NCBI GenBank assembly: GCA_012026655.1
Contig: JAAILG010001477.1
Coordinates: 1-64,000 of the forward strand
Source of the DNA: Hydrolagus affinis
Taxonomy: Eukaryota
Reading direction: 5' to 3'
DNA length: 64,000 nucleotides
Under the pieces are notes generated by a model that worked only from the letters and a program-made list of their open reading frames with translations, searched no databases and was not told where the DNA came from. A program made the translations under genes and the position numbers. Positions 140 to 51,705 of the stretch are shown here, in pieces (positions within the stretch are counted from its first letter, which is position 1; each line of letters begins with the position of its first letter).

Positions 140-192
140 GTTAAGAATCTAAACCTACAATAAACAAACCAAAAGTCTCTCTTTTCTTTCAG

Positions 193-25210: not shown

Positions 25211-25652
25211 AATTTCTGATCACTATGGCACTGCCATAGCAAAGCACAATTCAGCAACAACTTGCTGAACAGCTTCCTGTTTCTCCAGTGTTTGGCTCCT
25301 CACTTTATGAGGCTGAGCAACAGTCACTAAAAGGGACCTCAGGCAACAGTGAAAACCTCCGCAACAATATAAAATGTCTGAAAAGCTCTCATTTTTTACC
25401 AGGCCTCACTACCAGAACACTGGCAAGATGCCCGAGAAGGAGAGTGAAGCACACAACTAGACACACTACAAGAAAGCATCGGATCAGACATTTGAGTTGT
25501 GTTTTGGTAATGAGGAGCACTTGAAGAATCTACACAAGAAGCAGTGTAATCCTGAAGAAAATCTATCTTATTCTGGCTTCTTGCAGCTTTGCTGCTCATT
25601 CCACAATAAATATTTTCACAGCTTCAGTCCCCCACTGATTCGATCGTCGAGT

Positions 25653-26183
25653 ATGCAATGTATAGTTGACAAAGGTCTAGATGTCACAAGTAAAAATCAA
25701 CAGCAAACAACATTAGATGTAGTGGATGATGTTATAGGAGATGAACTTGCTGTTAAAGCTTCTCCCGCTTACTGCTCTAGTATTGATGCTTCAAAAAACA
25801 CAGCCTGGGAAAAGCACATTACGTCTCTCTCACATAATTCAGGAGGTTTACCTGACATAGCCAAACACACTGGAAGCATTTCTGCTGCAACTCACTCCAG
25901 TTCTGGGAAGTCAGAATCAGATTGCAGTCCCACAGAAACAAATGATGGTGCCATGCCTAAGTTTCAGCCAGTAACTTGCAATGTCGGGCTCAGCCAGGTG
26001 GTTGATAGCCAGAGTGTTGCATTCCAGTTATCACCATTTCCATCATCATCCTCTTCCACCTCTTCTTCATCACTGGCAGAAGACAGAAATGTGGAGTCAG
26101 AGCAAGTCATACCCTGTATAGTCAGAAATCCCTCCGGAGACAATGTACCGCAACCCAAAAGCAACGTAAGTGACAGTGTTGAG
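25653..26183 (+). CDS. Novel coiled-coil/CAP-Gly gene, first coding exon (exon probably begins at 25289; start codon uncertain)
   Basis: Frame open from 25461 to 26225. The first ATG after the in-frame TAG is at 25653 (MQCIVDKGLDV...Ser-rich...SDSVE). Phase-0 donor GAG|gtaggt at 26183 (alternative AAC|gtaagt at 26165) matches the phase-0 next exon. Confidence 0.72.
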
Positions 26184-26289
26184 GTAGGTGCAATCCTATT
26201 CATTTATGTTTTACAATGTCCTTAATGAAGTATTAAAGGAAATCGTTGATTTGCAGGGGTTTAAAAAATGTTTATATATACTTTTCAGG

Positions 26290-26670
26290 ATAATAATCCT
26301 TGCATATAACGGTACCTTTAACATCGAAAAATCTCAAAACACTTCACAGATAATTGTTGACTGTGCAGCTAAATATTAAAGCCATTTTGCACAGGAAGAT
26401 CATGTGAACACTCCCAAAAATGAATGATTGATTTATCTGGGGGAATGTTGGCCAAGACAACAGTATAAACTCCCTTCTCTTTCAAATAGGGATTTTCAAT
26501 GTCCACTTGAACTGGTAGACAGGAAAGGGGTTTAATGTCTCATCAGAAGGTCAGCAATGTAGCACTTTCCCAGGAAAGCACTGGAGTATCACCCTGGATT
26601 ATGATCTTGAGTGAATGACATGGGACTTGAACCCACAATCTTCTTACCCAGAGACAAGAGTGCTGCCAAT
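26290..26670 (-). mobile_element. Old Deu-domain-type SINE
   Basis: aataatccttgcat tail, aactcccttctcttcaaatag core, gggacttgaacccacaatcttc B-box region on the reverse strand. Confidence 0.6.
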
Positions 26671-29090
26671 CTTGTAAATACAACTGAATATGTACTCAGT
26701 GCCATACAAACTTAGAGTGAAAACTATAAAACTCAATAGCAAGTAAATTAACCATTAAGGAGATATTAGTTCCACCTAATATACTTCACAGATAGAAATC
26801 TATTCATCCTCCCCCATAAAAACAGACGAATATTTACTGTTTATGACGACAAAACTACCATTCCTGAGGACATGACAAATAGAACAGGAAATGTCCGCAC
26901 TATAATGGGATGAAAAGCATGAGGCTTCAAACCAAAATTGATGATAATCAAATCTACTGAGAATCATCGGAAATTTGTATCAATAGATAAATGGGGTATT
27001 TACATAATGGCTGTTTGTGGGACCTTGCTGACATAAATGGCTGGCAAGTTTGCCTATACAAACACCATACTTTGTAGAAACTAGTGGGGGGGTGCTAAAA
27101 AAAAAAATGCCAGGTTGTTTCAAGTTGATTCTTATTGAAAAACAATCAATTTACATATTGTGGCATTCCAATAGCATTACATCTGAGGTGTAATCCATTT
27201 CATGGCTCTCAGGAAAAAGAGTTGAATAACTGGTGTGTTACAGTGTACAAATTCTATGGTTTACAGTAGATACAATAATGATAATCCTGGCATTTCATAT
27301 AGCGCCTTATTGCGTCTTCAATATGTCTCCAAGATGTTCAATTGAAGCTGAATAGTAGGTAAGGGCAATAAATCTGAAGAATAAGAGGTAAACAAAGAAA
27401 AGAACGGCATTGAACCCCTCCCCCACACTCTCAAAAAAAAGCAGCTAATTCTCTTCAAATGTATCTGAATAGGAATAATTACTACAGGAATAAACATAAT
27501 TTACATGTGTGGGTACATACGTATTGTATGCACATAAAATGTTTGCTTGCTATTCCACACTAATAAAATCAATCATCGACTGCAGAAATAATGAGTTAAG
27601 CATTTACTGTTGTGACATTATACTTTAGCAAATAACTGGAACAGACAAATAGTGGAACTTGACAAGCAACAACACCAAAATACAACAACATTACATTTAT
27701 AGAGCAGTGAATATGGGAGAGAATAAAGAAGCATTGTTCACCTGGAGTCTGTTAATCCAGTTGTGAAACATCTTTTCAACTGACTGAACAAACATTAGAA
27801 TCTGCAAAAGATTTTGTTACAGTATTCTGTTTTTCATCACTCAACTGTAAAGATTAGTAATGTGTCATTTGAAATTTGTTCAGTTAACTCTTGATTGAGG
27901 TATTCAGTCAAGTTACATCAAGTTACATTTTTCAGCAGTGTGTTTCAAAGCTCTTGGTTTCATACTGCTGTGAGATTTGTTGTTGTGTATGTTGATTTTA
28001 AAGGGTTATCATTTTATATGAATAAGAGAACATTTAAGTCTGCTGTTGGTGGTAGTGATGGGGGATGGGTGAAGGACCTGCACTCATTGTATGGTCTTTT
28101 CTCAGTGCGTCATATCACAGTCAGTATGAACACTGGTGATTATTGCTCTACACTGTTTGAGTGTGGATGGTAATGAATGGAGAAACATGATTGGAAGGCA
28201 GAGAATATTCTTGTGCTACTTGCGAGCAAGCCTCCCCCTTAGAGTGGCGTATGAATTCGATGACAGTCCAATGGCCCACGATGACAGCTGAGGCACCAGA
28301 TCTGCTTTGGTGAAAAACATCTGAGCCTACTGTTGCCAAGCATCACTTTAAATCAACAGTATGGAGTGGCAAAGATGTGTTTTGGCCGCTTAGCTTGTGA
28401 ACAGAATCAACAATGAAGGTAAATGAACTGCAGCTTCTTACTGGATGTGAGATCAGTCTGAAGTAGCCAGACTTTTTGCTTAGTAAGGTGTGTGTGTGTG
28501 TGGGGGGGAGGGGAGATGGAGTCAGGTTATCCTTTTTGTTTATGCACAGATTGTGTGAACACACAGATACTCTACTCCTCCATTCTGTTCGATTGCATTG
28601 TGTGCAAGGACAGATTTGAGGGGCAGAATTACTGCAGCTACAGCAGCTTCTTTGTTATGAACACCAGTGTTTCACTGAAAAGAGGATTCATCCTGAATCT
28701 GCTGATAGATTGTACAAAATCGTATGAACATCACCTGTAGGCAAGGAATGTTTGTGGAATAGCTTGCTGTTGAAAGCCAAAACCAAACCCTTTTGATTGA
28801 AGCTTCCATGGTGCCTACTAAGAAAATTAAACCTGCCTTAGTGAACATTTTCAATTGTATATTTTTTATATACAATATAAGTTTTTTTTATTACAACTCA
28901 ATATTTGATTTGCTCATGGAGAGACTATGATAAATTCAAATGATCTTGCTTGTTTGTTACATACTGTATATTCACCGCTACTGTCTTAACAATGTATCCA
29001 CAGCAACAATGATTTTTAGAAAGGACTACTGTTTGTTTTAATTCAACATGGTGAAAAACGCTGTATGTGATGCAATAATTATCATTATAT

Positions 29091-29402
29091 GGAGTCCTAT
29101 AGCTCAGCAGTTAGAGCATTTGCCTTGCAAGAGAGAGACCTGGGTTCAATTCCAGACAGGGCGAAACCTTGGGCAAGTTTCCTTACTCCACACGCCTGAT
29201 ACTAATCCCTTAAAAAAAACCAATAATAAATTGGTGATTTTAATCCACGACTGTTTGCAGGACACTGCTGTGCACAATTGGCTACCGTGTTTCACCCACG
29301 TATTTACAGTCAATTCACTTACGATGTATTCTGTGAAGCACTTTGAGACGTCTAGAATACATGAAAAGTGCTATATCAAACGCAATGATTATTATTATTA
29401 TC
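29091..29402 (+). mobile_element. Full-length tRNA-derived SINE
   Basis: ggagtcctatagctcagcagttagagc head through a (tta)n tail. Confidence 0.92.
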
Positions 29403-29621
29403 ATTCATAATCATAATACTGTAATCTGTTGCCCCCCTCCCCCGACCAAAATAATCTATATTTGACCAGTTCAAAGAGCTTTTAATGACCAGCTCAAATG
29501 ACCTGAAATATTTGAGCAAAGTGGGGGAGAGGGTTGCTGCACATTGGCAAATTATAGACTGCTATTCTAGCAGTTTTTATTACATTGTAGCAAATATTTG
29601 AAACCCATATCATTTAATATA

Positions 29622-30187
29622 CAGATACCTCGCCCCAGCCGCGGTTTTTTCTATCATGAATTTCACTCATCCACGGTTGGCTCGCTGCGACAACCCTTGC
29701 TAACCACGGCAATGGGTTTTGCGTATCCACAGGTTTGAACACTAACACTAGCATTTAGTGCTAGGACCCAGTTGCATCAACCAGCCACAATGTCGCTTTG
29801 CGCTAGCGTTTGGGGCTAGGACCCAGTTGCGATGTCGCAATCAACCAGCGATGATGTCGCTTCTCCACATCCACCCACCTCCGTGTCACCCACCACACCA
29901 CCTTCTCCACATCCACCTCTCTCGCACTTGTCGGTGATTTATGATCTGGAGGAGGAGGCAGAGGAAGAGGGTGCGCAGGGCCTCTCTTCCATGTAAAAAC
30001 AACCACATCATCATCATCATTAGGATTTAGGTAAATAACATGAATTTTTTTGTATGTAGGTCAAGGACAAGCAAATGTACTCCCCCTATCCCCATGTTTC
30101 CCATAGGGCCCTGCATTTTCCAACTGCGGTTTTACTAACCGCGGAGGTTTTCGGAACGTATCCCCTGCGGTTGGGGAGGGATACCTG
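29622..30187. mobile_element. Tigger-like MITE
   Basis: TA|CAGATACCTCGCCCCAGCCGCGG ... CCTGCGGTTGGGGAGGGATACCTG|TA imperfect TIRs. Internal duplication ctaggacccagttgc. Confidence 0.75.
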
Positions 30188-30344
30188 TACTCATCTTGCA
30201 TCATAGACTGATATAATATGCTCGTTTAGCACAATATAAATTGGGTGATCTTTTGGGATGTTTCTTAATGCCTTTGTGGAGATCACTATCATATCAGACA
30301 CTGTGAAATACTCAATATTTAACTCTGTTCCTTATCATGACATT

Positions 30345-30585
30345 GAGAAGTCACAGTGTAAAGTGGATTGGCTGTGCATTTTGCGAGCGAAACATAGCAG
30401 CCAATTGCACACAGCAGTGTCCCAAGAATCGTTGTGGATTGAACCACTAAATTATTATTATTTTTTAAATTGGGTCCCTATTTACTGTTAGGTAAACAGA
30501 GACATGTAGAGTAAGAAAACTTGCCGAAGATTCACCCTACCCAGGAATCGAACCCGGATCCTCACTTTTAGAGTGCTCTAACCAA
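30345..30585 (-). mobile_element. tRNA-derived SINE variant
   Basis: cagccaattgcacacagcagtgtccc...ggaatcgaacccgg on the + strand is the reverse of the SINE. Confidence 0.8.
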
Positions 30586-30778
30586 TAGTCTCCCTCCAAT
30601 CTGACTCAAATTTCATTTGAGATTTTGGAAGCAGGTTTCTATGATTTTTGGATCTATTATGGTGAGATCGCCAGGGAGGTAGTGGAGTGATCCAATATGA
30701 AATGCTGCATATTTCACCCCTTAATCAATTGTATTAATTATAATTGTGTTCACATTAGTATCCCTTCCTTTATTTCAG

Positions 30779-30955
30779 GCTGCAGAGGGGACTGTCAGTC
30801 AGGCCACTGTGGCTGGTCTCAGTGCTCTCCTGGCTGTGAAAGATAAGGATTTCAAGGAGCTCGACAAAGATATGAAGAACCTTCAGCTGATCAACAAGCA
30901 GCTTTTGGAAGAAAAGTCCATACTTGTGTTAGAAAATCAATGGCTTCAAAAAGAG
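30779..30955 (+). CDS. Novel CAP-Gly gene exon (177 nt, phase 0-0), start of coiled coil
   Basis: ccttcctttatttcag acceptor and GAG|gt donor. AAEGTVSQATVAGLSALLAVKDKDFKELDKDMKNLQLINKQLLEEKSILVLENQWLQKE, with heptad pattern. Confidence 0.88.
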
Positions 30956-31051
30956 GTGTTTTTTCATTCATTAGTTTCCATTTCTGTTCGTCAAATACGC
31001 ACATTTATAATTTTGTCAGAATAATGACGCCTGAAGCCAATATTGAAAATA

Positions 31052-31774
31052 CAGGCGCCACCGCGTAATCGGGAACCGCTTAAGCAGGATCATCTCTTAA
31101 TTGGGACGAAACAGCGTGTGACTGTTTTTATGCTTGTTATTTGCATTGGATAAGCGAGACTGCACAAGGCTTTGACGGGACATTTTTTGTCAACACAGAT
31201 TTTCAGTCACCAATATTCTCGCTTGCCGTAACATATTTCTTCCATGTAACACCTTACCGGCCATACATACATGTGCAGGGAGTACTTAACAGCGCAGCCA
31301 GCCAGCCATACAATGTACACTTTGCAGTGTGCGAAGTGGCTATACATGTCGTGCAAAGATCGTATGTACGTTCTGCCAGCTGCACTAGCTAGCGGTACAC
31401 ACACTGTATGTCAGCATGCATACACACACTGCAACAGAAAGTTAACCTTGTGTCATGAGAGAGAGCGGGAGAGAGCGCACGCAGGAAGAAACAGCCACAG
31501 GGAGGGACATTGCTGTATTGCTTTAAAGAAGGAATAACAGTAGAAGGTTTTTTTTAATACATTGTTGATTCTTTCGTGATTTCCGCGTGTACTTTACCCA
31601 TGTTTGTTCGTGTTGTGTTATGAATCTGTTGTGTGTAGAATGCATGTGCCCACGTACTGAGCTTTGTGTTGGGTGAATAATGCGTCTGCTGCTTGGCATC
31701 GCCTAAACTGGAGCCTCGCTTAAACGGGACATTTAATCGTCTCCCAAGCTGTCCCGCTAAAGAGGGGGCTACTG
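31052..31774. mobile_element. Tigger-like MITE
   Basis: TA|CAGGCGCCACCGCGTAATCGGGA ... TCCCGCTAAAGAGGGGGCTACTG|TA degenerate TIRs, CpG-rich termini. Confidence 0.6.
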
Positions 31775-32518
31775 TACTTGGAGCAGGCTTCTTGGATTCA
31801 CTCTCAGCACAGCCACTAATTTCAAATAGGTAGTCACTTTTCAGGTGCCACTTTGCACGACACTTAAAAACATCTCAATAGCAAAACCTCTGATCTAATT
31901 GTTGCTCACAATTTGCAAACTCTGCATTTTCAACCTCACACTGTTTGTTTAAGTGGCTCTTGGATTTCTACTTGATACCTATTCTGTTAAACCAGACACA
32001 AAGCTACTCAATGTCAAAGTGGCTTCACCAGAGTTAGAGGACAAGTGATGTCAACTGCAGTTGCTGTGTGAAAGTATAAACCTTCTTCAAACTGGACCTG
32101 CAAATCTAACTGTGCTCCAAAGTCCAATTGGGTCTCTAATCCAATGTGATAATTTGCTGTAGGGTAAAGATGCAACAGAGAAAACTGCAGAATAATCCTG
32201 GCACATTCACTGGTCTCAAGTCCAGAGGCGTTTTTAACGTAGGTGTGATCGGTGCACCAACAGGCCCCTCATACTGTGGGCCCCCAAAGTAATGCAAAAA
32301 ATCATCGAAATGGGAGGATTTAAGTGTGCTGTGCTCTTGCCTTTTGTTAAATACCTGTATAGCTAAAACCAGAGCTCTCCCCAGCCCGGCGGAGCAGGCG
32401 GTCCGCCTAAAGAGGCATCGCACTCGCCGAAAGTTAGTTTTTGCATAAAATAAAATTGCGCATGAGCACTTATTAAACTTACCGTCAGTGATGAGCCCCC
32501 TAAGAAAATTGACCGAGT

Positions 32519-32618
32519 NNNNNNNNNNNNNNNNNNNNNNNNNNNNNNNNNNNNNNNNNNNNNNNNNNNNNNNNNNNNNNNNNNNNNNNNNNNNNNNNNN
32601 NNNNNNNNNNNNNNNNNN
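32519..32618. other. Assembly gap (100 N)
   Basis: Run of N, flanked by a possible DNA-transposon end (about 32223-32518) and a minus-strand SINE (32619-32792). Confidence 1.
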
Positions 32619-34333
32619 CTGTATATATTTGTGGGCGAATTGTGGCAGCCAATTGCGCACAGCAGTGTCCCACACACAGTCGTGGATTGAAATGACCAAT
32701 TTTATTATTGTGGTTTTTTTGGAGGGATTATTATTAGGCGTGTGGAGTAAGGAAACTTGCCCAAGGTTTCGCCCTGACCTGCCTGGATTTGACTAGGTTG
32801 ACTAGGTGGGGAGAGGTGAGGTGAAGCTGAAATGCTCTCTACAGACAAGTGGCTCACTGAGATTCACTGCCAAGGCTCACGAAGGAACAATTTGTCCTGG
32901 AGTCCTGTAAAGTAACAACACCAATGAACTGCACTCCAGCAAGAGGAGATCAGTCAAGGTATTTGCCGATTACAAAGATTAATTCGACACAAATTTCTTT
33001 TAAAAATTGATTTTGGAAAAAAAAGGGCACAGCCAGGTGTAAAATCATTCTGTGAATGGCTAAAAAAAAGAGAAAGCAATAAACTGCAGGGGAGCAAAAC
33101 ATATCCTTAACTTTAAGAACACGACTGGAATTCCTCAGACAAGTGTACTATAGAACTGAAAAACCGTTTGCAGTTATAATCACTACCCTCATCTGCGTGA
33201 TTGTTTGGAAACAATTCCCAGAATATTGTGTTCCAGCATAAACTGTGTAGTTTATTGCTGGTTCCATGCCAGCAACAAAGCCTTCAGTCACAACACACGA
33301 GTTGTGTGTGCAGTATCTTCAACACTGAGGAGTCACATGCATCAGTGCCATGGAGATAAAGTGGTAATGTTTGAGGTGGTATCAGTCTTTGGCCTAGTCT
33401 ATGAATAGAAATAGAACAAAGGGACTTCAGAGTAGCATATTGCAGATAGATTTGTTTGCTGCTTCGGCCACGCTACGTGTCTTATCAAAGTTAGCAAATG
33501 TTCCCAATACCTTTTAAATCTTCTGCTTACCAGTGAGAACAATTATACAAACAAACACAACTTGTAGCTTTCAAGTAAACCACTGTCAAGCAGTATTTTA
33601 AGGAAAGTTTATTTATACATAACACTAAGGGGATCGATATTGGACATAAATGATCCAGTTTCTCTAATTTTGACACGATAAGAATCCCTCCAGTATACAA
33701 CCAAACAGTTTTGCAAATTCTGCATAAAATAGTGGGATTCAGTGGCTTTATGATAATAATAAACCTTGAGTTTAATATAGAGCTTTATCACCTCTTTGAA
33801 ACCTCTCAAAGCGCTTCACAGAAGATACTGTATTGGCTGTATATTTTCAGGGCGAATCATGGGGTCCTTTTAGACCAGAGGTGGATTTTCAAATATTTCC
33901 AGCTCCGTTTTCAAACAGGTAGTGTTCAATTGAATGTGGTGTTTTACTTAGCAACAGGCTAACAGTAGGATGTTTTGAAAGCTTTGAAGTACAGTACCTT
34001 GAGCAGAGATCATGTCAGTGAGCACAATCAGGCAAATCAGCTCATTCTTTATGCTGGCGCTGTCTGAGCTCAATATCTTTCTCATCAACCCATCCTCAGT
34101 GAATTCTGTCGATTGTCAATTGTGTTCAATACTGTGATGTTTGAATACAGATTATTGAGATATGTGAACAACATCAACAACAACCTCGATTCATATAGCG
34201 TCCTCCACGTAGGACAGCGTCTCAGTGCGCTTCACAATAATGGATCCCGGGCCCGAGCCGAGTGAAGTTGATAAAGATAATGAATAAAGTATAGGAAAGA
34301 TGTGAATGAGATTTTGCTCTTCTATCGTTTTAG

Positions 34334-34430
34334 ACAAAAAAGGCTCGCGAAGAAAAGATGAAGGATGAGTGTGGCGCAGAGCACTTTGCCTTTAACCCAA
34401 TTGCGCCAACTGTGCTACAGCGACAAATAG
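34334..34430 (+). CDS. Novel CAP-Gly gene exon (97 nt, phase 0-1)
   Basis: cgttttag acceptor and TAG|gtaata donor. TKKAREEKMKDECGAEHFAFNPIAPTVLQRQI. Confidence 0.88.
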
Positions 34431-34673
34431 GTAATACATCCTTCCATTTCCGGTTTGTTCGTATCATAAAACAGTATCTGGTACTTTGCAGCACTTACTA
34501 ACTGCACACTGTGATTTCTGACAACAGATAATTTGATTAAAAACTGAGGATTTAAGCATTCATGTTTCTTTCTCACAGAATCAGCTTTGATCAACCTGGC
34601 CCATTACACGGAATAGAAAAATAATATTTGGCTTTGTTCTGAGGATGAGTAAAACAATGTGTTTATTTTTCAG

Positions 34674-34843
34674 AGGATTTAAAAAGCCACATTAGAGATC
34701 TCCAGGAGGCCAATGAAACTGTTGTCAATGAACTCTCCAAGGCAGATGAAGAAATCTCTGAGCTGAAAGGCGAGATAGCAAGATTGAGAGTTCCCGATGA
34801 ACTACGAGATGCCAGGCAAGAGAGGGATTACTGTAAAGATAAG
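34674..34843 (+). CDS. Novel CAP-Gly gene exon (170 nt, phase 1-0), coiled coil
   Basis: tttatttttcag acceptor and AAG|gtac donor. (E)DLKSHIRDLQEANETVVNELSKADEEISELKGEIARLRVPDELRDARQERDYCKDK. Confidence 0.9.
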
Positions 34844-35337
34844 GTACTCACGTTTCTGGATAAATCTCCTGTCAGTTTAAAAATGTAACTTTGAGAGATA
34901 ACCAATAACCAACAATAACTACTTGGATTGATACAGCTCCCTCCACACCAGACGGCGTCTCAGAGCACTTCACAATAATGGACCTCGGGGCCGAGCCAGT
35001 GGGAGGGGGAAAAAGGTGACCGAAAGCTTGGTCGAAAAGTCTTTAGGCACGATTTTTCTTTCTGCTTATTTGCATTGAATTGATGATGTGATTTAAAAAT
35101 GTAGCCAGGAGTGATGCTCCACTAATGTACAGTGTACTCTATATGAGTTGTACGTTATACAGAGATTGTATTAGGGTTTTAAAAATGCATACTACGATGT
35201 GGGAATAACAATTTTTGAGTACAGTACAGGCAGATTTTTGTGCATAATATACACACAATTTTGCATTAACCTGATTTCTATTACATCAATCAGTTTGCCA
35301 GCATGGAAACTAATATGAACTGATTCAATATCCTCAG

Positions 35338-35575
35338 ATCTGTAGGCTGCATTCTGATTCACCCCAGCTAACAGGGAAAGACAATACTTCAGATTTACTG
35401 GAAGAAATACAACATTTAAGGATTGAGTCCAGGAAGCTCAGAGAAAACAACCATCAACTTGATGAGGAAAACCATCAAATGAAAGAAGAACTGTGGGATT
35501 TTAGGCAGCACCAAGAATGGTTCTTCAATGCAAATCACAAAGAGAAGAAGCAAAATTTGGAAATTAACAAAAAGG
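35338..35575 (+). CDS. Novel CAP-Gly gene exon (238 nt, phase 0-1), coiled coil
   Basis: tcctcag acceptor and AGG|gtagga donor. ICRLHSDSPQLTGKDNTSDLLEEIQHLRIESRKLRENNHQLDEENHQMKEELWDFRQHQEWFFNANHKEKKQNLEINKK. Confidence 0.88.
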
Positions 35576-35629
35576 GTAGGATTTTATAAAACAACAATTT
35601 CACAAACTCAGTGCAATCCTGATACGTAA

Positions 35630-35830
35630 CAATAATAACAATAATCCTTGCATTTAATCTCGTGCCTTATCATGTGGTTGAGATCGTCTCAAAGTGCTTC
35701 ACAGGTGATATTGTCAAGTGGATTGACTGTATATTTTGAGGATGAACATGGTAGCTAATTGTGCATAACAATGTCTTACAAATAGCGATGTAATGAGTAA
35801 CCAATTTTATTTGAAAGAGATTTATTGGCC
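35630..35830 (-). mobile_element. Old SINE 3' part, followed by a (CA)/(CAGA) microsatellite at 35940-36010
   Basis: aataataacaataatccttgcattt...tctcaaagtgcttcacag is the reverse SINE tail. Confidence 0.7.
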
Positions 35831-37269
35831 AGGTTTGGATAGACCAAAATAAGACTGGCAGCAGTATTATATTGACTATGTAAAATGTAACAAAGAGCCA
35901 TTTGAAGAAAGGGAGGGAGGGAGGGGTATGTGTATGTGTACACACACACACACACAGAGACAAACAGACATACATACAGACAGACAGACATACATACAGA
36001 CAGACATACAAAAATGCATACATACTGGAGCGATATCTGTCACTTTCCTTAACCCACTCCTTATATATTAATTGGTGCCAGTGTATATCAAATATGAAAT
36101 TATATAAAAATGTGTGATTAAAAGTTGATGTTATGAAAAATATATGCTGTAAACAAGCCTGTTCAGGTCACTGCTAGTTTACAATTTGTACATTCCTCTG
36201 ATCCACCAGCATAATTAGAAGCCTATCAGATTATCTCTATAGATAAATGGATAGATGTGTGACTCTCTACCCCTACATTCACACTTTGATCCTGACCTCT
36301 ACTCCTGGCAAATATCAGACATATTTTGTTAAGAATATAATCTATAATCTAGTTTGCTGTTTTGAATCAGTATTTTTTTCCCCAATCTTCCAAATTGAGG
36401 AAACTGAGTTCCTTTCTTCACACATTTTAAAAATATGTATTTTTCATCATTTGAATCCTCAAAGTGGTTGATTTCTGCGTAATAAGATTGCCACGGATGT
36501 CACTTCCTGCAAACTGCAATCCTCACTATCACTAGAGGCCATTTGTGCAATTGAAACATTCAATAACTATTAAAAAAAAACTGAAAATAGCAAATGTAAA
36601 ATAATACTATTCATTAAACAATTATAAAAATATAAGGAAATATTTTTTATACAATATACTGTACTTTCATTGCCACAAGGGTCATATTGAAGCTGGACTA
36701 ATTGAATCATCTAAAAATGAACTGAACAAACAGCAGTAATAAAAGATTAAATGATATGGGAGATCTACAGCAGCAAAATTATATTAATAAAATGATAGGG
36801 AACTTTAGTAATTCAAATAGCAGACTTAATGCATGAAATGTTTCATTTCTGTGCTGAAAATTTCTGTTTCTATCAGGCACAATTACAAGTAGCAGAAATG
36901 TCTGGTTGAACACTGTTTACAACAGAAAAATTACATTTATATAGCGCCTTTCATGTCGGGAGGACATCCCAAGGCGGTGAGCAAGGCACTTTAGCAATGA
37001 AAGCAATTCAGTGTTCATTTTCAGCCCTCTCTGATAATAGTATCAGCCAGTCAAAGATTTTGGAGACCATAGGCTAAAGTCTCTCTTTGATGCTATACTT
37101 TAGATAGTTAAACACAAATTTTGCAATTGTTGTAACCTTTCTCAAGCTATTAATAAATAGGAAATTTGAATCACTGAAAGAGAGTTCAGTGGCCTCTCAT
37201 TCCTTTTCTCTTTTTTTTACTGGAATATTAACTCTTAGGCTTCTGACATGAATGTAATTTGATTGTTAG

Positions 37270-37381
37270 GTGGAGTTGTAAGACTAGCACAGAAGGTACC
37301 GCTGTGTAAAAAACAAGTTGTCATCCTGATGAAAGAGCCTTTGCAAGAGTTGAAGCGCATCGCCCCTTCCTCCAAGTGCAG
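37270..37381 (+). CDS. Novel CAP-Gly gene exon (112 nt, phase 1-2)
   Basis: Weak ttgttag acceptor and CAG|gtaaaa donor. (G)GVVRLAQKVPLCKKQVVILMKEPLQELKRIAPSSKC. This is the only open frame, and it supplies exactly the phase 1->2 bridge needed by the flanking exons. Confidence 0.65.
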
Positions 37382-37567
37382 GTAAAAACAGTGTTCAAAA
37401 GAGAAGAGCTCACATATATCGCAAGAATGAACGGACAATTTTAGATTGGTAATTTAAAAATATCTTCCCCAAAATTCAGACATTTTTGCTTTCACTGATT
37501 CCTGTAAGCAGGTGTGTTTTTTTTAAAAAAAAAACTTCTTAAATGACTTATGATTCACATTGAATAA

Positions 37568-37790
37568 AATCTGAAATAAAAACAGAAGTCACTGGGAATA
37601 TTCAGCAGATGAGGCAGCATCTATGGAAAGAGGAAAGGGAGTTAACATTTCAGGTGGATGACCTTTCGTGATCATTGACCTGAAGCGTCAATTTTCCCCC
37701 TCCATAGATTCTGCCGGACTTGATCCGTGTTCCCAGCAAACTCTGTTTCGATTTCAGATTTCCCAGATCTGCAATGTTTTTCCTTTTGTT
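37568..37790. mobile_element. Penelope-like inverted-repeat (fold-back) element
   Basis: ctgaaataaaaacagaagtcactgggaa...tttcaggt is mirrored by acctgaag...ttcccagcaaactctgtttcgatttcag. Confidence 0.7.
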
Positions 37791-38372
37791 TAATAAAACC
37801 TAATAAATTCATCATCATAGCCTCATGAAGATAGGAAAGCTCGTATCAGACTTTTAGACTATATTGCCAGAAATCTCCAACCACTTTGATCAATTTCTCA
37901 TAAATAAGGTGTAAGAAAATTGTGGCCTAGAAACTGAAACTTTTTGCAACTTTTAATGATTACAGTGAGTACCCATTCCCATTACACCATCCACCTACCT
38001 CTGTGCCCACTATCCATCACCCTATCCTACACCCTCATTGGACCATCCTACCGTTAGCCCAGTCTGTGATTTCCAATCTAAATGTAAGGATTATTTATTA
38101 TTATGTGGCACACATCGAGTACAAAACTTCAGTTACAAAATAAAATGGAACCCAGTCCAGCTGACATTATACGTTTGAAAGTACTGTAGTGGGAATGTTT
38201 CTGGGAATATTAGGCCAATTGTCCCAGCTCATGAGCTATGTTAAGTTATTACAACACTAAGTTTGAACAGAATTGCATTGAGTTCTCTTGTGCGGAAAGT
38301 AATGGGGATGAGTCGTTCTTTTATTTACCAACACATTTACTCAAATTATCTTTTCTCTAAACCCTTTGACAG

Positions 38373-38470
38373 AATTGAATTTGCCACATTAGAAGAGAAA
38401 AACGGTCGACTTAAATCAAGCCAGAAAGTAACCAGTGCATCTTTTGATCAGACAATCCAAACATGGGACG
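38373..38470 (+). CDS. Novel CAP-Gly gene exon (98 nt, phase 2-1)
   Basis: ccctttgacag acceptor and ACG|gtaaat donor. (R)IEFATLEEKNGRLKSSQKVTSASFDQTIQTWD. Confidence 0.8.
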
Positions 38471-39297
38471 GTAAATTATTTTTCATTTAGACAAAACTAT
38501 TTCTGCCACATGAGGACAAATGTAAAAGCAAGTAGAAAACAGTTATATTGAATACATATATTTCAACCTTTATTTCAAATGTGAAAATGTACTTTTAAGC
38601 CTACTGTTTGCAGGGTGGAGACTGCTGAGAGGAATGGGGATCAGCGAGTCTGTTTTTTCCTGAATTCTGTACATCGCTTTGAATTGGGTGTAATGCACAA
38701 CATTCTTTTTGACATTCTATGCATGAATGCAATTTTACTGTTTAATAGGATCAATCAACAGTCTGTTCAATGGTCCAATAGCCTCTGAATAGAGAACAGC
38801 AAACCCAATGTTATTTATCCACATGGGTGAAAATCACATTTCTTCAAAACTACCCATTTCAATAGATGGAAGGAATAAATTGTGCTAGGATTAACTGTGT
38901 AATAAGTAACCTGCCACTCAACTGGACTTTGCGTCAAGCTCCAAATAAAAAATACATGAATTTCAGGACAGGCTGAAACAGTGAAGTTATCTGCTCTATT
39001 TGAAATTAGCTTGGAGTAGCTATATATTCTTTCCATCAAAGAAATGCAAAGTTATGTTGAATATTTGAACTACTGGCTTGGTGTGGTTAGGAATGAGCTT
39101 TCTTCAAATTAACCGCAGTGTACTTGACTCTGTTCAGTAAAATTCAGGATTTTCAAAAACCAAAGATCAGTGCACCAAACCTAGTTTCTGATCCCTTTAA
39201 CCCTTTTCGCAATCTGATACAAATTACTTTTTTTTGTAATTTACTAAAGTATTGTGCAAATTGGTCGGAATTCAGTCATCTAAAAAAATTCTATATT

Positions 39298-39470
39298 AAA
39301 TTGGTCATTTTCAATCCACGACTGTTTGTAGACACTGCTGTGCACAATTGGCTGCTGCGTTTCACCCACAAATACACAGTCAATTCACTTTACTGTATAT
39401 TCTGTGAAGCGCTATGATACTTCTAGAAGACGTGAAAAGTGCTATATCAAATGCAAGGATTATTATATTA
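39298..39470 (+). mobile_element. SINE 3' half
   Basis: aaattggtcattttcaatccacgactgtttg...gcaaggattat. Confidence 0.88.
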
Positions 39471-39512
39471 TTATTATTTATTATCTAATACATTTCCATT
39501 GCTGTCTCTTAG

Positions 39513-39647
39513 TCAAAGACAAGGAAAGAGCTGAAAACTGTGTCTCTCCTATTTCATTGGACAGTGACAACACAGAAGCTCTTATTGCATCATGCAACAA
39601 TGGGATCTTCAGTCAGTCTTCCCACTCAAAAATCAACAACTTTAAAG
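39513..39647 (+). CDS. Novel CAP-Gly gene exon (135 nt, phase 1-1)
   Basis: gtctcttag acceptor and AAG|gtaatt donor. (V)KDKERAENCVSPISLDSDNTEALIASCNNGIFSQSSHSKINNFK. Confidence 0.82.
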
Positions 39648-39990
39648 GTAATTGCTAGAGTGTGACTTTTCATGATAAATAATAGCTTGGTTGGTTCTGA
39701 CCTGTCATGCTCAAAACACTGGACTGACCATTTGATTTCTCCTCATTATTAACTAAATATCAGCCTGGGTTGATTGGTAGTAGGCTATAGGTTGTCCAAC
39801 TCCATGTCACTAGGCTGATAGTCTTGGGGAAGTGCTGGAATGTTAGAGGTGCAATATCACATTTTGGATGTGATATAAAGCAGAGGGCTCATCTGCTCAT
39901 CTGCCAATCATAGCTAAAAACAGAGGGAGAGTTATTTTTTAAGTGCTGGATTTAACATTTCCTTTTTATTCCTTTGAGATCATCTCCTAG

Positions 39991-40135
39991 ACCTGGATGG
40001 CTTGAGTGATGAGGATGTGCCCTCTTTAAGGGAGATCAATGGTGACTCCTTAAAACACTGTTCCAGGCCAACTCCCAGGAAATCTTCACAGGCAGTAATT
40101 TGGAAAACCTTTAACAGGAATAACCATCTCATGAG
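39991..40135 (+). CDS. Novel CAP-Gly gene exon (145 nt, phase 1-2)
   Basis: catctcctag acceptor. The GAG|gtttgt donor gives the phase 2 needed by the CAP-Gly exon. (D)LDGLSDEDVPSLREINGDSLKHCSRPTPRKSSQAVIWKTFNRNNHLM. Confidence 0.78.
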
Positions 40136-40191
40136 GTTTGTGAGCTACAGCTCTGAGCAATGGAATTCAACAATAAGTACAATAAGCAGTA

Positions 40192-40398
40192 CAGTAAAAG
40201 CCCATTTATCCGGCACCCTCGGAACCTGGCCAATGCCAGTTAAAGCGCCTGCTGGATATTTAGCCGAAAACACACAAAAAAAATTTCAATGCATTTTTCC
40301 GCATAAATTCCGGTTAATCGAATGCGGACTTTTTTTGGGGGATGCCAGTTAAACGGAAGTTGCGGTTGATCGGGTGCCGGATAAACAGACTTTTACTG
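40192..40398. mobile_element. Tigger/pogo MITE (short)
   Basis: TA|CAGTAAAAGCCCATTTATCCGGCACCC ... GGGTGCCGGATAAACAGACTTTTACTG|TA. Confidence 0.92.
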
Positions 40399-41216
40399 TA
40401 CTTCAGTTTGGTTGTGTTTCACGCTGGAGGGAGTACCAGGTTACAATCTCACCTCGAATGTGAGATAGGCTCTTAATTAATGCCGGTGTCATTTCAAATC
40501 AAGAACTTAAATGCTTGTTTTATCTAACCTCAAATATGGTTCTACACCATAGCTTTCTATTTTCAACCTGTTGATTGAGTGTTGGCTTGCAGGACACTGC
40601 CTTTAATTCACTTTACAGTATATTCTGTGCAGTGCTTTGAGACGTCTAGAAGATGTGAAAATCGCTATATCAAATGCAAGGATTATTATTATATTATTGT
40701 TAAAAGTTGAGTAAAGACAGTATCCTGTTAACCGGTATTCCAATGCCACAATCCAATGCTGTCAACAATAACAACAAATTATGTTTGCATAGGGTCTTTC
40801 ACATAGGGTGGACATCCAAAGGCGCTGGACAGTCAGGGATATTGACACGAGCTGGAGATTGGGATCAAAGAGGGTGGAGGGCAGCGAGGGTAAGGGTAGG
40901 AGGATGGTCTATATAAATTGCATGTATATAGATCCTTTCGTGCTGTCAGTCATTATGAACAAAGTTTATGAATGAGTTTACCAATGGGAAAGACCGAATT
41001 ACAAGTATTTAATCGTATGGGATGAAAATATCATCGGTCCTGCCCCAGAACTGTTGCTTTTCCTGGGTTTTCCATGTACCTGTGGGGACAGCACAGCATT
41101 CCAAGCACATTTAGTGAATGTGAAGTGGCTTGAGTGTTGCAGATATATCACATATTCTTAGAGCAGTTCACGTTTAACTGCAGTCGGCTATAAAAGATGT
41201 ATTCCTCTTTAAATAG

Positions 41217-41453
41217 GCCTGCGCTTTGTAAAGCAGTGCTGCCACGACGCCCATTCGCACCAAGGAGTGTTGCAGACCTGAAAATAGGGCATCTTGTGAA
41301 GTTTTCTCGGCCAGCAGGAAAAATCAGCAATGGAGCAGTTAAATATCTGGGTCCCCTACCGGGCCGACAACAGGCGTACATCGGTGTAGAACTGGAAGGC
41401 AATGAAAGGGGAAAGCACGATGGGATATTCGAAGGTGTTCGTTATTTCATTTG
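41217..41453 (+). CDS. Novel gene exon encoding most of a CAP-Gly domain (237 nt, phase 2-2)
   Basis: ctctttaaatag acceptor and TTG|gtaagt donor. ...DLKIGHLVKFSRPAGKISNGAVKYLGPLPGRQQAYIGVELEGNERGKHDGIFEGVRYFI fits the CAP-Gly signature G-x-V-x-Y-x-G...GVEL...GK[NH]DG...G-x-RYF. Confidence 0.95.
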
Positions 41454-42004
41454 GTAAGTTTGTACACGTTTGATTGTTGGTAGTAAAAGCTAATAAAATG
41501 TATGGATTTGTCACTTAAATGCGTCAGTTCAATTTTAGAAGACTCGGCGTCGAAGGGATATTGTGCAGCGCTCAATTGTGCATGACTACAACAAAATTAC
41601 ATTTATAGAGCGCCTTCTACGTCGGGAGCACGTCCCAATGCTCTGGCGGTTCATAACAGTTTCTCCTTTCCACTCTTCATGTTTCTACGCAAGCGATTTT
41701 GTCAACGATTAACAGAACAACATTTGTGGAAAGCCAATTTTCCTCAAGATTTTTTCAGTCTGCACAATTAGGAATACTAATTCAAAACCAGCTGAACACA
41801 GACACCAATGGAACAGACACATCTGCTGGAAGGTTTTACCTGGTCTGAAAGGATAGGGTGATCCTAACTTGCGTGATGGTTTGATAGATACAATAATCAC
41901 ACCATGGTGGAAATGTTAGTTGCTAAATTAAATAACATTAAATAAGCAAAGTGGGAAAAAATTAATTGGATACAAGGTCATGACTCATGTTATTTAAGTA
42001 GAAT

Positions 42005-42628
42005 GCAAAATACAGTACTGCAGATGGTGGAAATCAGAAAACAGAAGTCGCTGGGAACACTCAGAAGGTCAGGCAGCATTTATGGAGAAAGGAAAGTGAA
42101 TCAACGTTTCGGGTACATGACCCTTCGTTGGGAGGGAGAGGCTTTTAAGGACTAACAAAGAGGGTTGGGGGGAACAGAACCTCATCTATCTGCTAGGGAT
42201 CTTACAGCTCTGGCCTCAATAAACAATTTCAGACCATAACAGCTCACCTTCCCCCTCCCTCTCTTCTGTGACCATTACCACGTCATCCGGATCCCAGACA
42301 CACCTTTTCTCTCTCAGGTCTGCCTGTTCTGTTGCAACTCCCCCACTTTGTTTTTCATTATTAACACCACTTCTCCAGTTTTGTTGCAATCCTCCCTTTG
42401 TTTGGACCATCAGCACCTCTTTAACTCATCATCTCCTGCCCTCCACCCCATTTTGTCCTTTGTTTTCCTTGCCCTACCTCCCCACTCTCCATTAGTCTTT
42501 AAAAGTCTCCTCCTCCCAACATGCCCTAGTTGTGACAAAAGGTCATGGACCCAAAACATTGACACACTTTCCTTTCTCCATAGATGCTGCCTGACCTGTT
42601 GAGTGTTCCCAGTGACTTCTGTTGCTTT
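42005..42628. mobile_element. Penelope-like element with inverted termini
   Basis: aacagaagtcgctgggaacactcagaaggtcaggcagcat at the left end is mirrored by atgctgcctgacctgttgagtgttcccagtgacttctgtt at the right end. Degenerate hammerhead-like cores at about 42103 and 42530. Confidence 0.75.
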
Positions 42629-42719
42629 TATTTAAGTGATTGTAGACATCCATACATTTCTAATGAAAGCTAAATACTACAGCTTAAAACAATTGATCTG
42701 CTTTGCTCTTTTCTCACAG

Positions 42720-42777
42720 CAAATCAAACAAAGGAGTATTTGTAAACTTCAGTAAGGTTATCATGGCCTGGGAATAG
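42720..42777 (+). CDS. Novel CAP-Gly gene terminal exon
   Basis: ctttgctcttttctcacag acceptor, phase 2. (C)KSNKGVFVNFSKVIMAWE* completes the CAP-Gly C-x-x-x-x-G-x-F-V motif. AATAAA at about 43549, 43565 and 44685. Confidence 0.93.
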
Positions 42778-51556: not shown

Positions 51557-51705
51557 TCAGGTGTACCTCGGCATTTCACACTGTTCACAGCGATTCAGCG
51601 CTGGGTGGTTGAGAAAGGTGCAACTGTTACAATTCCATGGGGCACCTTCAAAATCTTCATCTCTTTGATGAGGCCTTGGACTGTACTTCATAGCGTGACT
51701 GTGCT
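51557..51705 (-). CDS. TAB3: TAB3 terminal coding exon, NZF (RanBP2-type) zinc finger
   Basis: ttttaatgcag acceptor. (E)[48 protein letters not shown], near-identical to the human TAB3 C-terminus (TAB2 ends ...MPRHF). Confidence 0.98.

What the first reader, a model, noticed from the sequence alone, without database searches (positions are those of the whole stretch)
25289..42777. Unrecognised coiled-coil + C-terminal CAP-Gly gene between GK and TAB3
Seen in sequence: 11 GT-AG exons (25653-26183, 30779-30955, 34334-34430, 34674-34843, 35338-35575, 37270-37381, 38373-38470, 39513-39647, 39991-40135, 41217-41453, 42720-42777) join in matching phases into a 1998-nt stop-free frame (about 665 aa). 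The product has a Ser-rich disordered N-terminus, a coiled coil of about 200 aa, a linker, and one complete CAP-Gly domain at the extreme C-terminus. Established knowledge: this architecture matches none of CLIP1-4, DCTN1, CEP350, KIF13B, TBCB, TBCE or CYLD. GK and TAB3 are convergent neighbours on human Xp21, and I recall no coding gene between them. Inference: this is an uncharacterised microtubule- or tubulin-tail-binding protein, probably an ancestral gene lost in mammals or else lineage-restricted.
Basis: partly seen in the sequence, partly recalled or inferred. Interest (0 to 1): 0.85.

Follow-up and report, generated by a model that had tools for sequence, protein, structure and literature searches.

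The report
Unnamed ancient CAP-Gly gene beside GK
Between the glycerol kinase and TAB3 genes of this cartilaginous-fish genome lies a real gene for a coiled-coil protein ending in a CAP-Gly domain, one copy of an old animal gene family that nobody has named or studied and that did not turn up in mammals, birds or teleost fish.

Summary
All 11 exons have AG/GT borders, matching phases and open frames, and end at TAG 42775-42777. Exon 10 alone passes Pfam CAP_GLY. GK ends at about 3.87 kb (+) and TAB3's last exon is at 51560-51691 (-).

The gene is the orthologue of Callorhinchus milii 'uncharacterized protein LOC103186410', at 72-94% identity per exon with the same exon borders. Relatives carry only placeholder or spurious automatic names. 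They occur in lampreys, sharks and rays, bichirs, sturgeons, gar, bowfin, coelacanth, amphibians, turtles and lizards, and in amphioxus, tunicate, crinoid, brachiopod, molluscs, rotifers and coral. None came from mammals, birds, crocodilians, snakes or teleosts.

Two corrections:
- The exon 9 acceptor is more likely 39979 than 39991.
- The ancestral first 146 codons (25225-25652) are still recognisable but carry two TAG stops and a 4-nt loss.

The rest keeps every invariant family residue. RNA support is almost nil, at two reads. Binding to microtubules or tubulin tails is inferred, not shown. The nearest solved CAP-Gly is CYLD's third.

The parts
192..326 (+). GK (glycerol kinase) penultimate coding exon, upstream neighbour
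   Evidence: tblastn with the GK part of the Polypterus merged model P0189 (aa 331-375), 62% identity, E=5.8e-5
3761..3874 (+). GK last coding exon, running to its stop
   Evidence: tblastn with E. coli glpK taken from L001 (E=0.002) and with P0189. The translation runs to a stop about 3872-3874.
24905..25211 (+). tRNA-derived SINE that ends 14 nt before the ancestral start codon
   Evidence: Rfam tRNA match at 24905-24976, 39.8 bits. Read depth in the millions up to 25211, with many repeat joints there. Further copies of its 3' part lie at 39333-39466 and 40556-40689.
25225..25652 (+). Decayed ancestral N-terminal coding stretch (orthologue aa 1-146): TAG at 25237-25239, a 4-nt loss after 25376-25377 that shifts the frame, and TAG at 25458-25460
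   Evidence: tblastn of P0001 gives two HSPs in different frames, each with an in-frame stop (letters checked). Relative 'organism A' has TCGA at 25376 and 6 extra nt at 25612, as C. milii does in length, but carries its own 8-nt loss at 25421.
25653..26183 (+). Exon 1 as modelled: first ATG of the remaining open frame; holds the DVVDDVIGDE motif and the Ser-rich disordered region
   Evidence: The orthologue region has pLDDT below 50.
30779..30955 (+). Exon 2, start of the long helices
   Evidence: 82% identity to P0001 aa 320-380
32519..32618 (.). Assembly gap inside intron 2; not filled
   Evidence: one search shows the N run. Orthologue residues 380 and 381 abut across exons 2 and 3.
34334..34430 (+). 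Exon 3 (FNPxxPxVLQRQI block)
34674..34843 (+). Exon 4 (DLQEANE...KADEEIS block)
   Evidence: The invariant L, L and A are kept.
35338..35575 (+). Exon 5 (LRxESRKLRExNHxLxEENHxxKEELWD block)
37270..37381 (+). Exon 6 (linker)
38373..38470 (+). Exon 7 (linker)
39513..39647 (+). Exon 8 (SPxSLDSDxTE motif)
39979..40135 (+). Exon 9 with the acceptor favoured here.
   Evidence: The orthologue has DHLLD there. A pyrimidine tract precedes AG 39977-39978. The split codon G|AT reads Asp.
41217..41453 (+). Exon 10: the RPFAPR motif and most of the CAP-Gly domain (GKHDG loop)
   Evidence: Pfam CAP_GLY E=5.1e-12; 90% identity to P0001
42720..42777 (+). Exon 11: last strands of the CAP-Gly domain, C-terminus ...VIMAWE, stop TAG 42775-42777
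   Evidence: The junction codon TG|C keeps the invariant Cys.
51560..51691 (-). TAB3 last coding exon (NZF zinc finger), the convergent downstream neighbour
   Evidence: A motif scan located it. Best PDB match 3a9k_C, TAB3, E=3.8e-18, ahead of the TAB2 chains.

Best explanation
This is a real protein-coding gene. It is the local orthologue of an unnamed, ancient metazoan family with five parts: a disordered Ser-rich N-terminal region with an acidic DxVDDVxGDE motif, about 200 residues of long helices (a probable dimerising coiled coil), a disordered linker with an SPxSLDSDxTE motif, an invariant RPFAPR motif, and one CAP-Gly domain that ends the protein (...VIMAWE). In jawed vertebrates it sits just downstream of GK on the same strand, here convergent with TAB3.

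In this genome the ancestral first 146 codons have decayed. The product would therefore start at the internal Met at 25653 and have about 665-669 residues. One shark RefSeq model begins 13 residues after that point.

Inferred mechanism: a coiled-coil dimer presents two C-terminal CAP-Gly domains. Their conserved basic and aromatic groove (Y, K/R-H-D/N-G, R-Y-F) would bind an acidic C-terminal tail, most likely the EEY/F ends of alpha-tubulin or EB proteins. This would tie whatever the N-terminal motifs bind to microtubules.

What is shown: the gene structure, orthology, domain and fold, conserved position next to GK, and taxon range. What is inferred: dimerisation, the ligand and the cellular role.
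For: Structure: exons, phases, split codons and stop are all in order.

Orthology: exon 10 finds proteins of about 460-870 aa with a single CAP-Gly ending about 19 residues before their C-terminus, best P0001 at 90%.

Constraint:
- The window keeps 20 of 21 invariant and 58 of 60 near-invariant family columns. The 21st invariant residue, a Cys, is the split codon TG|C.
- A relative-rate count with a shark as outgroup gives 20 window-only against 23 C. milii-only changes in 642 sites, and 4 against 4 in exon 10.
- There are three disabling lesions plus a 6-nt loss in the 428-nt ancestral N-terminal stretch, against none in the 2010-nt frame that remains.
- Relative 'organism A' has a different frameshift in that same stretch and no indel in exon 1's coding part.

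Short start: the Chiloscyllium punctatum model P0154 (664 aa) begins 13 residues after the window's Met.

Synteny: GK and TAB3 flank the gene. Merged GK plus CAP-Gly gene models exist in Polypterus, Acipenser ruthenus and Podarcis raffonei.

Fold: the AlphaFold2 model of the orthologue has pLDDT of 86-96 over the C-terminal domain and 84-95 over most of the three helices. In Foldseek, every row shown through rank 44 is a CAP-Gly structure, at 1.6-2.3 A over 72 columns for the best five.

Vertical descent: a quick ML tree of 40 orthologues recovers chondrichthyans, ray-fins, amphibians and reptiles as single clades.
Against: - The ancestral N-terminus is broken. If transcription still starts upstream, the ATGs at 25225 and 25374 open short upstream reading frames ahead of 25653.
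- RNA support is nearly absent. In the single-cell poly-A run X14 of a close relative, with 27% of the run read, two reads with one start lie on exon 1. None lie on exon 2 and there is no junction read.
- Of the 18 listed differences from organism A inside exon 1's coding part, 15 change the residue and 3 do not. That is what neutral change would give. The table shows only part of all differences, and 12 of the 18 cluster in the Ser-rich tract.
- dN/dS on exons 2-11 could not be computed.
- The CAP-Gly loop is GKHDG, not the canonical GKNDG; the canonical form is recalled, not from a call. It has one extra loop residue, and its nearest solved relative is CYLD CAP-Gly3, deposited bound to ubiquitin.
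- The window has its own changes at well-conserved CAP-Gly positions: GKISK/QG becomes GKISNG, and EVGKHDG becomes ERGKHDG.
Confidence: 0.7

Rival explanations
1. A young unitary pseudogene. The lesions in the first 146 codons mark the start of decay of the whole gene in this chimaera lineage, and the open frame from 25653 has simply not been hit yet.
For: There are two TAG stops and a frameshift in 25225-25652. Organism A has an independent 8-nt loss in the same stretch. Listed changes in exon 1 run 15 non-synonymous to 3 synonymous. Almost no RNA was seen. A SINE sits 14 nt before the ancestral ATG.
Against: There is no stop or frameshift in 2010 nt, whereas the 428 nt upstream hold four lesions. 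At that density about 19 would be expected in the frame that remains (my arithmetic). The window keeps all 21 invariant and 58 of 60 near-invariant residues. Its branch is no longer than that of C. milii. A shark RefSeq model begins at nearly the same point.
Confidence: 0.12
2. The gene is real, but its CAP-Gly domain does not bind tubulin tails. Like CYLD's third CAP-Gly, it would bind ubiquitin or a proline-rich partner, making the family a coiled-coil signalling or scaffold adaptor rather than a microtubule-associated protein.
For: The best sequence and fold matches among solved structures are CYLD CAP-Gly3 (1ixd, 7owc, 7owd; E=2.5e-7 by sequence, 2.0e-6 by fold), with the same loop length. 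The 7owc entry title says it is bound to Ub. The canonical Asn of the GKNDG loop is His here.
Against: The Lys/Arg of the loop, the aromatic before GVELEG and the R-Y-F are kept across the 10 orthologue sequences shown, whereas CYLD CAP-Gly3 has GCTDG. TBCB, CLIP and dynactin domains match the fold almost as well, at 1.6-2.9 A.
Confidence: 0.2
3. These are not exons of a separate gene but alternative 3' exons of GK, giving a GK plus CAP-Gly fusion product.
For: Merged models carry FGGY_N, FGGY_C and CAP_GLY in Polypterus (P0189) and Acipenser ruthenus (P0291). A Podarcis raffonei model named 'glycerol kinase isoform X5' also contains the coiled-coil core.
Against: GK's last exon ends in its own stop at about 3874, 21 kb upstream. 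Dozens of species have stand-alone models with their own start. Invertebrate members also lack any FGGY domain.
Confidence: 0.04
4. A diverged or fragmentary copy of a named CAP-Gly gene (CEP350, CLIP1-4, KIF13B, TBCB, TBCE, CYLD or DCTN1).
For: Some automatic names say 'centrosome-associated protein 350' or 'CLIP2'.
Against: The CEP350 CAP-Gly ranks 30th of 31 PDB sequence hits, at E=0.0053. No other Pfam domain passes its cut-off in seven orthologues. Within the family the CAP-Gly is 55-90% identical from molluscs to sharks, against 23-36% identity to the solved domains.
Confidence: 0.02

Closest known systems
CYLD, third CAP-Gly domain (PDB 1ixd, 7owc, 7owd)
   Same: It is the best sequence and fold match among solved structures. 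It shares the loop length before the G-x-x-D-G turn and a similar PG..EV..G.ELE stretch.
   Different: CYLD has three CAP-Gly domains and a USP deubiquitinase domain and no long coiled coil. Its loop is GCTDG, where this family has GK/RHD/NG. Identity is only about 33%.
TBCB (tubulin-folding cofactor B; C. elegans F53F4.3, PDB 1lpl and 1tov; mouse 1whg)
   Same: It has a single CAP-Gly at the C-terminal end of the protein, preceded by a helical segment. The fold match is 1.6 A over 72 columns.
   Different: By recall, TBCB is about 240-250 aa with an N-terminal ubiquitin-like domain. No such domain is found here, and the protein is 660-870 aa with 200 aa of helices.
CLIP-170 / CLIP-115 (CLIP1/2)
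   Same: They also combine a coiled coil with CAP-Gly domains, and they are the model for a dimer that binds EEY/F tails. Their fold matches at 2.0-2.9 A.
   Different: By recall, the CLIPs have two CAP-Gly domains at the N-terminus, before the coiled coil. Here there is one domain, at the extreme C-terminus; one search reports a single matched stretch, and one search agrees.
CEP350 and KIF13B
   Same: Each has a single CAP-Gly towards the C-terminus. Some orthologues are auto-named CEP350.
   Different: By recall, CEP350 has over 3000 aa and KIF13B has a kinesin motor. Their CAP-Gly domains are weak matches, at E=0.0053 and 0.00032, and no motor domain is found.

Membership tests
CAP-Gly domain proteins (Pfam PF01302) | Profile match above Pfam's gathering score | tested here: met
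   Exon 10 alone scores 46 bits against a cut-off of 26.5. The orthologue P0001 scores 59.9 bits over profile positions 10-65 of 65.
CAP-Gly domain proteins (Pfam PF01302) | CAP-Gly beta fold | tested here: met
   Tested on the C. milii orthologue, which is 90% and 94% identical to exons 10 and 11. Its pLDDT is 86-96. Every Foldseek row shown through rank 44 is a CAP-Gly structure. The window's own joined protein was not folded.
CAP-Gly domain proteins (Pfam PF01302) | GKNDG loop that lines the EEY/F-binding groove (motif recalled, not from a call) | tested here: inconclusive
   The window has GKHDG. Relatives have GK/RHD/NG, so Lys/Arg is kept and Asn is replaced by a near-invariant His, with one extra residue before the loop.
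Unnamed orthologue group of C. milii LOC103186410 | Conserved blocks in order: DxVDDVxGDE; FNPxxPxVLQRQI...LQEANE...KADEEISQL; LRxESRxLRxxNHxLxEENxxLKEELWD; SPxSxxSxxTE; LPRRPFAPR followed by CAP-Gly and ...VIMAWE at the C-terminus | tested here: met
   All blocks are present in exons 1, 3-5, 8 and 10-11. The window keeps 20 of 21 invariant and 58 of 60 near-invariant columns, and the split-codon Cys supplies the 21st.
Unnamed orthologue group of C. milii LOC103186410 | Position just downstream of GK on the same strand | tested here: met
   In the window. In other species this is shown only indirectly, by merged GK models in three species.
Unnamed orthologue group of C. milii LOC103186410 | Full-length N-terminus (about 150-190 residues before the DxVDDVxGDE motif) | tested here: not met
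   The homologous stretch 25225-25652 has two stops and a frameshift. The open frame starts 21 residues before the motif.
CLIP1/CLIP2 | Two N-terminal CAP-Gly domains before the coiled coil (recalled) | tested here: not met
   There is one CAP-Gly, at the C-terminus.
CLIP3/CLIP4 | Ankyrin repeats plus two or three CAP-Gly domains (recalled) | tested here: not met
   No ankyrin match was found and there is a single CAP_GLY.
KIF13B | Kinesin motor domain (recalled) | tested here: not met
   No kinesin match in seven orthologues.
CYLD | USP catalytic domain and three CAP-Gly domains (recalled) | tested here: not met
   Only one CAP_GLY and no USP domain, although CYLD's CAP-Gly3 is the nearest solved domain.
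TBCB / TBCE | Ubiquitin-like domain, and LRR in TBCE (recalled) | tested here: not met
   No such Pfam match.

The most novel reading that the evidence does not exclude
This would be a further, so far unnamed CAP-Gly protein family of animals. It would date back at least to the cnidarian-bilaterian ancestor and have been kept next to GK since early jawed vertebrates. It would have been lost separately in mammals, archosaurs and teleosts. No arthropod or nematode was among the 30 representatives I looked up, so the family would be missing from nearly every genetic model organism except Xenopus and lizards. Its CAP-Gly is closest to the ubiquitin-binding third domain of CYLD, so it may link ubiquitin or another non-tubulin ligand to a coiled-coil scaffold rather than act as a classical plus-end tracker. 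In chimaeras the family would be shedding its N-terminal region while keeping the rest.
Probability: 0.3. Interest if true: 0.65.

Novelty: new member of a known kind. Interest (0 to 1): 0.5.

Why it matters
CAP-Gly proteins are a small, well-studied set that read the tyrosinated ends of tubulin and EB proteins. This family is conserved and single-copy, runs from coral to lizards, and has no name, no paper and no mammalian member. That marks a gap in the catalogue of microtubule-associated or CAP-Gly-based adaptors. Its absence from mouse, human, chicken and zebrafish, and apparently from fly and worm, would explain why it was overlooked. Xenopus has a copy (LOC108708387 and LOC100495307 by the source names), so the function can be tested directly. 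The repeated losses could be compared with traits shared by the lineages that kept it. For this genome, the practical result is a corrected gene model: the exon 9 acceptor, and a shortened start with a decayed ancestral N-terminus.

Tried and rejected
I therefore could not fetch orthologue DNA, read neighbouring genes in other species, or compute dN/dS for exons 2-11. In their place I used a protein-level relative-rate count, retention of invariant residues and the merged GK gene models.

It gave DNA of two relatives about 2% diverged from the window but only two RNA reads. The junctions of exons 2-11 and the choice of exon 9 acceptor remain untested by reads. Table 3 of that call shows 40 of 194 differences, so I cannot say whether the two TAG stops are shared by the relatives.

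Named kin for the coiled coil:
- Pfam gave only sub-threshold coiled-coil matches (ZapB, YabA, Rab11-FIP3, DUF7491 and others).
- The protein atlas gave generic coiled-coil look-alikes (PPP1R21, Spindly, CEP128) sharing at most 109 of 256 features. I rejected these as kin.
- The atlas search with exon 10 returned only CAP-Gly clusters.

First whole-protein word search: with coelacanth P0013 it was swamped by low-complexity words. Only the 8000 candidates sharing most words were scored, giving 25 hits and missing known members such as P0001. The two region-limited searches worked better.

Other checks: ARAGORN found no tRNA gene, while Rfam found the tRNA-like SINE head. Two look-ups in earlier findings of this scan gave nothing relevant. 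The careful tree did not finish in 288 s, so the tree I cite is the quick one.

Papers: of eight searches, one failed on a term that was too short. The other seven found nothing on this family. I saw search listings and abstract starts only and read no paper.

Taxon absence rests on protein databases, not on genome searches. Of the 150 representatives listed, I could look up only 30. Two of those, P0025 and P0027, carry no name or taxon.

Full report
WHAT IS THERE. They are open in frames whose phases match, and they sum to 1998 nt. The seven codons split by introns are all sense codons, and the frame ends at TAG 42775-42777. Exon 10 on its own passes Pfam's CAP_GLY threshold: 46 bits against 26.5, E=5.1e-12, profile positions 10-50 of 65. 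Every search with window sequence used one exon at a time. Whole-protein questions were asked of natural orthologues that the tools returned.

THE GAP. The N run at 32519-32618 lies inside intron 2. In the closest orthologue the residues encoded by the end of exon 2 (aa 380) and the start of exon 3 (aa 381) are adjacent. No orthologous coding sequence is therefore missing, and the frame does not depend on the gap. Its true length is unknown. I did not fill it.

NEIGHBOURS. E. coli glpK and the GK part of a Polypterus model both hit the + strand at 3761-3835. The Polypterus model also hits 192-326. That last GK exon runs to its own stop at about 3874. On the - strand, 51560-51691 encodes an NZF zinc finger that ends the frame. 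Its best solved match is TAB3 (3a9k_C, E=3.8e-18), ahead of the TAB2 chains. The order GK(+), this gene(+), TAB3(-) is therefore confirmed.

WHAT IT IS. I scored exon 10 against 1.84 billion representative proteins. It found 351 proteins at E<=0.001. The top of the list is a set of proteins of about 460-870 aa with one CAP-Gly stretch that ends about 19 residues before their C-terminus, as here. The best, P0001 (90% identity), is Callorhinchus milii 'uncharacterized protein LOC103186410'. tblastn of P0001 against the window hits all eleven exons in order, at 72-94% identity. The window therefore comes from a relative of C. milii, and the model is supported by an independent annotation.

I looked up 30 of the 150 listed representatives. 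Twenty-eight carry a taxon:
- cartilaginous fishes: chimaera, sharks;
- ray-finned fishes: bowfin, sturgeon, gar;
- coelacanth;
- amphibians: frogs, a caecilian;
- reptiles: turtles, an anole;
- lampreys;
- invertebrates: amphioxus, a tunicate, a crinoid, a brachiopod, five molluscs, two rotifers and corals.

Two region-limited searches added rays, bichirs, paddlefish, Xenopus laevis and X. tropicalis, more frogs, caecilians, turtles and eight lizard genera (51 hits, 49 hits). Every name given by a source is 'uncharacterized', 'hypothetical' or an evident mis-transfer. None of these hits is a mammal, bird, crocodilian, snake or teleost. No arthropod or nematode was among the 30 representatives looked up.

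A quick maximum-likelihood tree of 40 orthologues recovers cartilaginous fishes, ray-fins, amphibians and reptiles each as one clade, and tetrapods together (the careful search did not finish). This fits vertical descent of a single-copy gene. Turtles and lizards have the gene, so its absence from mammals, archosaurs and teleosts, if real, means at least three separate losses.

CONSERVED POSITION. Three gene models nevertheless merge GK with this gene. Polypterus senegalus P0189 carries FGGY_N, FGGY_C and CAP_GLY (one search confirms all three). Acipenser ruthenus P0291 carries the same three families. A Podarcis raffonei model named 'glycerol kinase isoform X5' contains the coiled-coil core. 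Such mergers arise when two genes are adjacent on one strand. The position downstream of GK is therefore shared by a chimaera relative, a bichir, a sturgeon and a lizard.

ARCHITECTURE. A 40-sequence alignment shows conserved blocks in this order:
- DxVDDVxGDE;
- an FNP..P..LQ.QI block running into LQEANE..V.EL.KADEEISQL;
- LR.ESR.LRE.NH.L.EEN..LKEELWD;
- SP.S..S..T;
- VLPRRPFAPRS followed by the CAP-Gly domain and a C-terminus VIMAWE.

AlphaFold2 on the C. milii protein with that alignment gave a mean pLDDT of 54.7. Residues 1-320 and 580-727 are below 50. There are three long helices at 327-393, 405-477 and 487-546, with 10-residue block means of 84-95 over most of each. A beta domain at 738-817 has block means of 86-96. 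Foldseek against the PDB gave 35 matches at E<=0.001. Every row shown through rank 44 is a CAP-Gly structure. The best are CYLD CAP-Gly3 (7owc, E=2.0e-6, 2.3 A over 72 columns) and C. elegans F53F4.3, a TBCB (1tov, 1.6 A). By sequence, too, CYLD CAP-Gly3 is nearest (E=2.5e-7), followed by CLIP4, CLIPR-59 and Bik1. CEP350 is 30th of 31. Pfam finds no other domain above its cut-off in seven orthologues.

TWO CORRECTIONS.
(1) Exon 9. Using it adds DHLL, which is exactly what C. milii has and where sharks also have residues. Both acceptors keep the frame, giving 2010 or 1998 nt.

(2) The start. P0001 begins 146 residues earlier, and those residues align to 25225-25652 at 78-92% identity. The alignment shows TAG in codon 5 (25237-25239), a change of frame after 25377, where the window has 2 nt in place of two codons, and a second TAG at 25458-25460. 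This N-terminal stretch is weakly but detectably similar between C. milii and two sharks at matching positions (E about 1e-3 in a 14-sequence database). It was therefore coding in the ancestor.

Contigs of two close relatives lie on this region at about 98% identity. 'Organism A' has four extra letters exactly at the window's frameshift and six more at 25612, both matching C. milii in length. It also has its own 8-nt loss at 25421. Its five indels between 25189 and 26985 account for all 23 gap letters reported. Three lie in the old N-terminal stretch and two in intron 1. None lies in exon 1's remaining coding part. Two related genomes thus carry different frame-breaking lesions in the same stretch and none after it.

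A tRNA-derived SINE (24905-25211) ends 14 nt before the old ATG. A RefSeq model of Chiloscyllium punctatum (P0154, 664 aa) begins 13 residues after that point, so a product of this length is not odd for the family.

IS IT STILL A WORKING GENE?
For:
- There is no lesion in 2010 nt, against four (two stops, one frameshift, one 6-nt loss) in 428 nt just upstream.
- The window keeps 20 of 21 invariant and 58 of 60 near-invariant family columns. The 21st invariant residue, a Cys, is the split codon TG|C. The one changed near-invariant column is shared with C. milii.
- With a shark as outgroup, there are 20 window-only against 23 C. milii-only changes in 642 sites, and 4 against 4 in exon 10.

Against:
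- Among the differences from organism A that the table lists inside exon 1's coding part, 15 change the residue and 3 do not. Only part of the differences are shown, 12 of the 18 sit in the Ser-rich tract, and this exon is disordered and fast-evolving in all lineages.
- The only RNA run available is a single-cell poly-A library of a relative, read to 27%. It put two reads with one start on exon 1, none on exon 2, and no junction read.
- The window has private changes at two well-conserved CAP-Gly positions.

I could not compute dN/dS for exons 2-11. I put a working, N-terminally shortened gene at about 0.8 and a young pseudogene at about 0.12.

HOW IT PROBABLY WORKS. This part is inferred. Long helices of this kind normally pair, so the protein would be a parallel dimer with two CAP-Gly domains at its end. 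The aromatic before GVELEG, the Lys/Arg and His of the G-K/R-H-D/N-G loop, and the R-Y-F that follows are conserved across the 10 orthologue sequences shown. That speaks for one conserved ligand that is acidic or C-terminal. By analogy with CLIP-170, p150Glued and TBCB, whose domains match the fold nearly as well as CYLD's, the likeliest ligand is the EEY/F end of alpha-tubulin or of EB proteins. The conserved acidic N-terminal motif and the SP.S..S..T motif would bind or regulate the other partner.

The main rival on mechanism comes from the nearest solved domain, CYLD CAP-Gly3, which was deposited bound to ubiquitin (entry title) and shares the longer loop. A non-tubulin ligand is therefore a real possibility; I put it at about 0.2.

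KNOWN OR NEW. Seven answered full-text searches found no paper on such a family. Three were by topic, one by CAP-Gly, C-terminal position and cilia, and three by 18 gene or protein ids. I saw listings and abstract starts only, and supplements are closed. Annotation pipelines already predict the gene in dozens of species, so it is not an unseen gene. It is an unnamed, unstudied family. I file it as a new member of a known kind (CAP-Gly proteins), with moderate interest.

Noticed in passing
window 24905-25211 (+); also 39333-39466 and 40556-40689: This is a tRNA-derived SINE: Rfam matches its head as tRNA, and relatives' reads pile up on it to depths in the millions. One copy ends 14 nt before the ancestral start codon of the CAP-Gly gene, and other copies lie in its introns. 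Short open frames of the 'DTAVHNWLP...VNSL' kind elsewhere in the window (for example 11514-11798, 29048-29410, 45633-45986) look like the same element.
   Followed up: partly
window 39977-39990: Two acceptor sites lie 12 nt apart, both in frame. They could give two isoforms that differ by four residues (DHLL).
   Followed up: partly
P0189 (Polypterus senegalus), P0291 (Acipenser ruthenus), P0289 (Podarcis raffonei): Public gene models merge glycerol kinase with the CAP-Gly gene. They are either annotation errors or real read-through transcripts, and they are a source of misleading 'glycerol kinase' names.
   Followed up: partly
window 21600-24000 (-): Long open frames on the - strand (for example 22271-23023 and 23014-23931) in a G+C-rich patch look like the remains of a retrotransposon. 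A similar patch lies at 54000-55500.
   Followed up: no
window 24960-30959 against runs X1, X5 and X6: None of the DNA runs that hold this stretch is identical to it. Two differently labelled organisms each differ by about 2%, at partly different places, so the window's own individual or species seems not to be among the indexed runs. Gut-metagenome runs also hold the stretch, presumably as host DNA.
   Followed up: no
window 25225-25460: If transcripts still begin upstream, the old ATG at 25225 now opens a 4-codon frame and the ATG at 25374 a 28-codon frame, both ahead of the main ATG at 25653.
   Followed up: no
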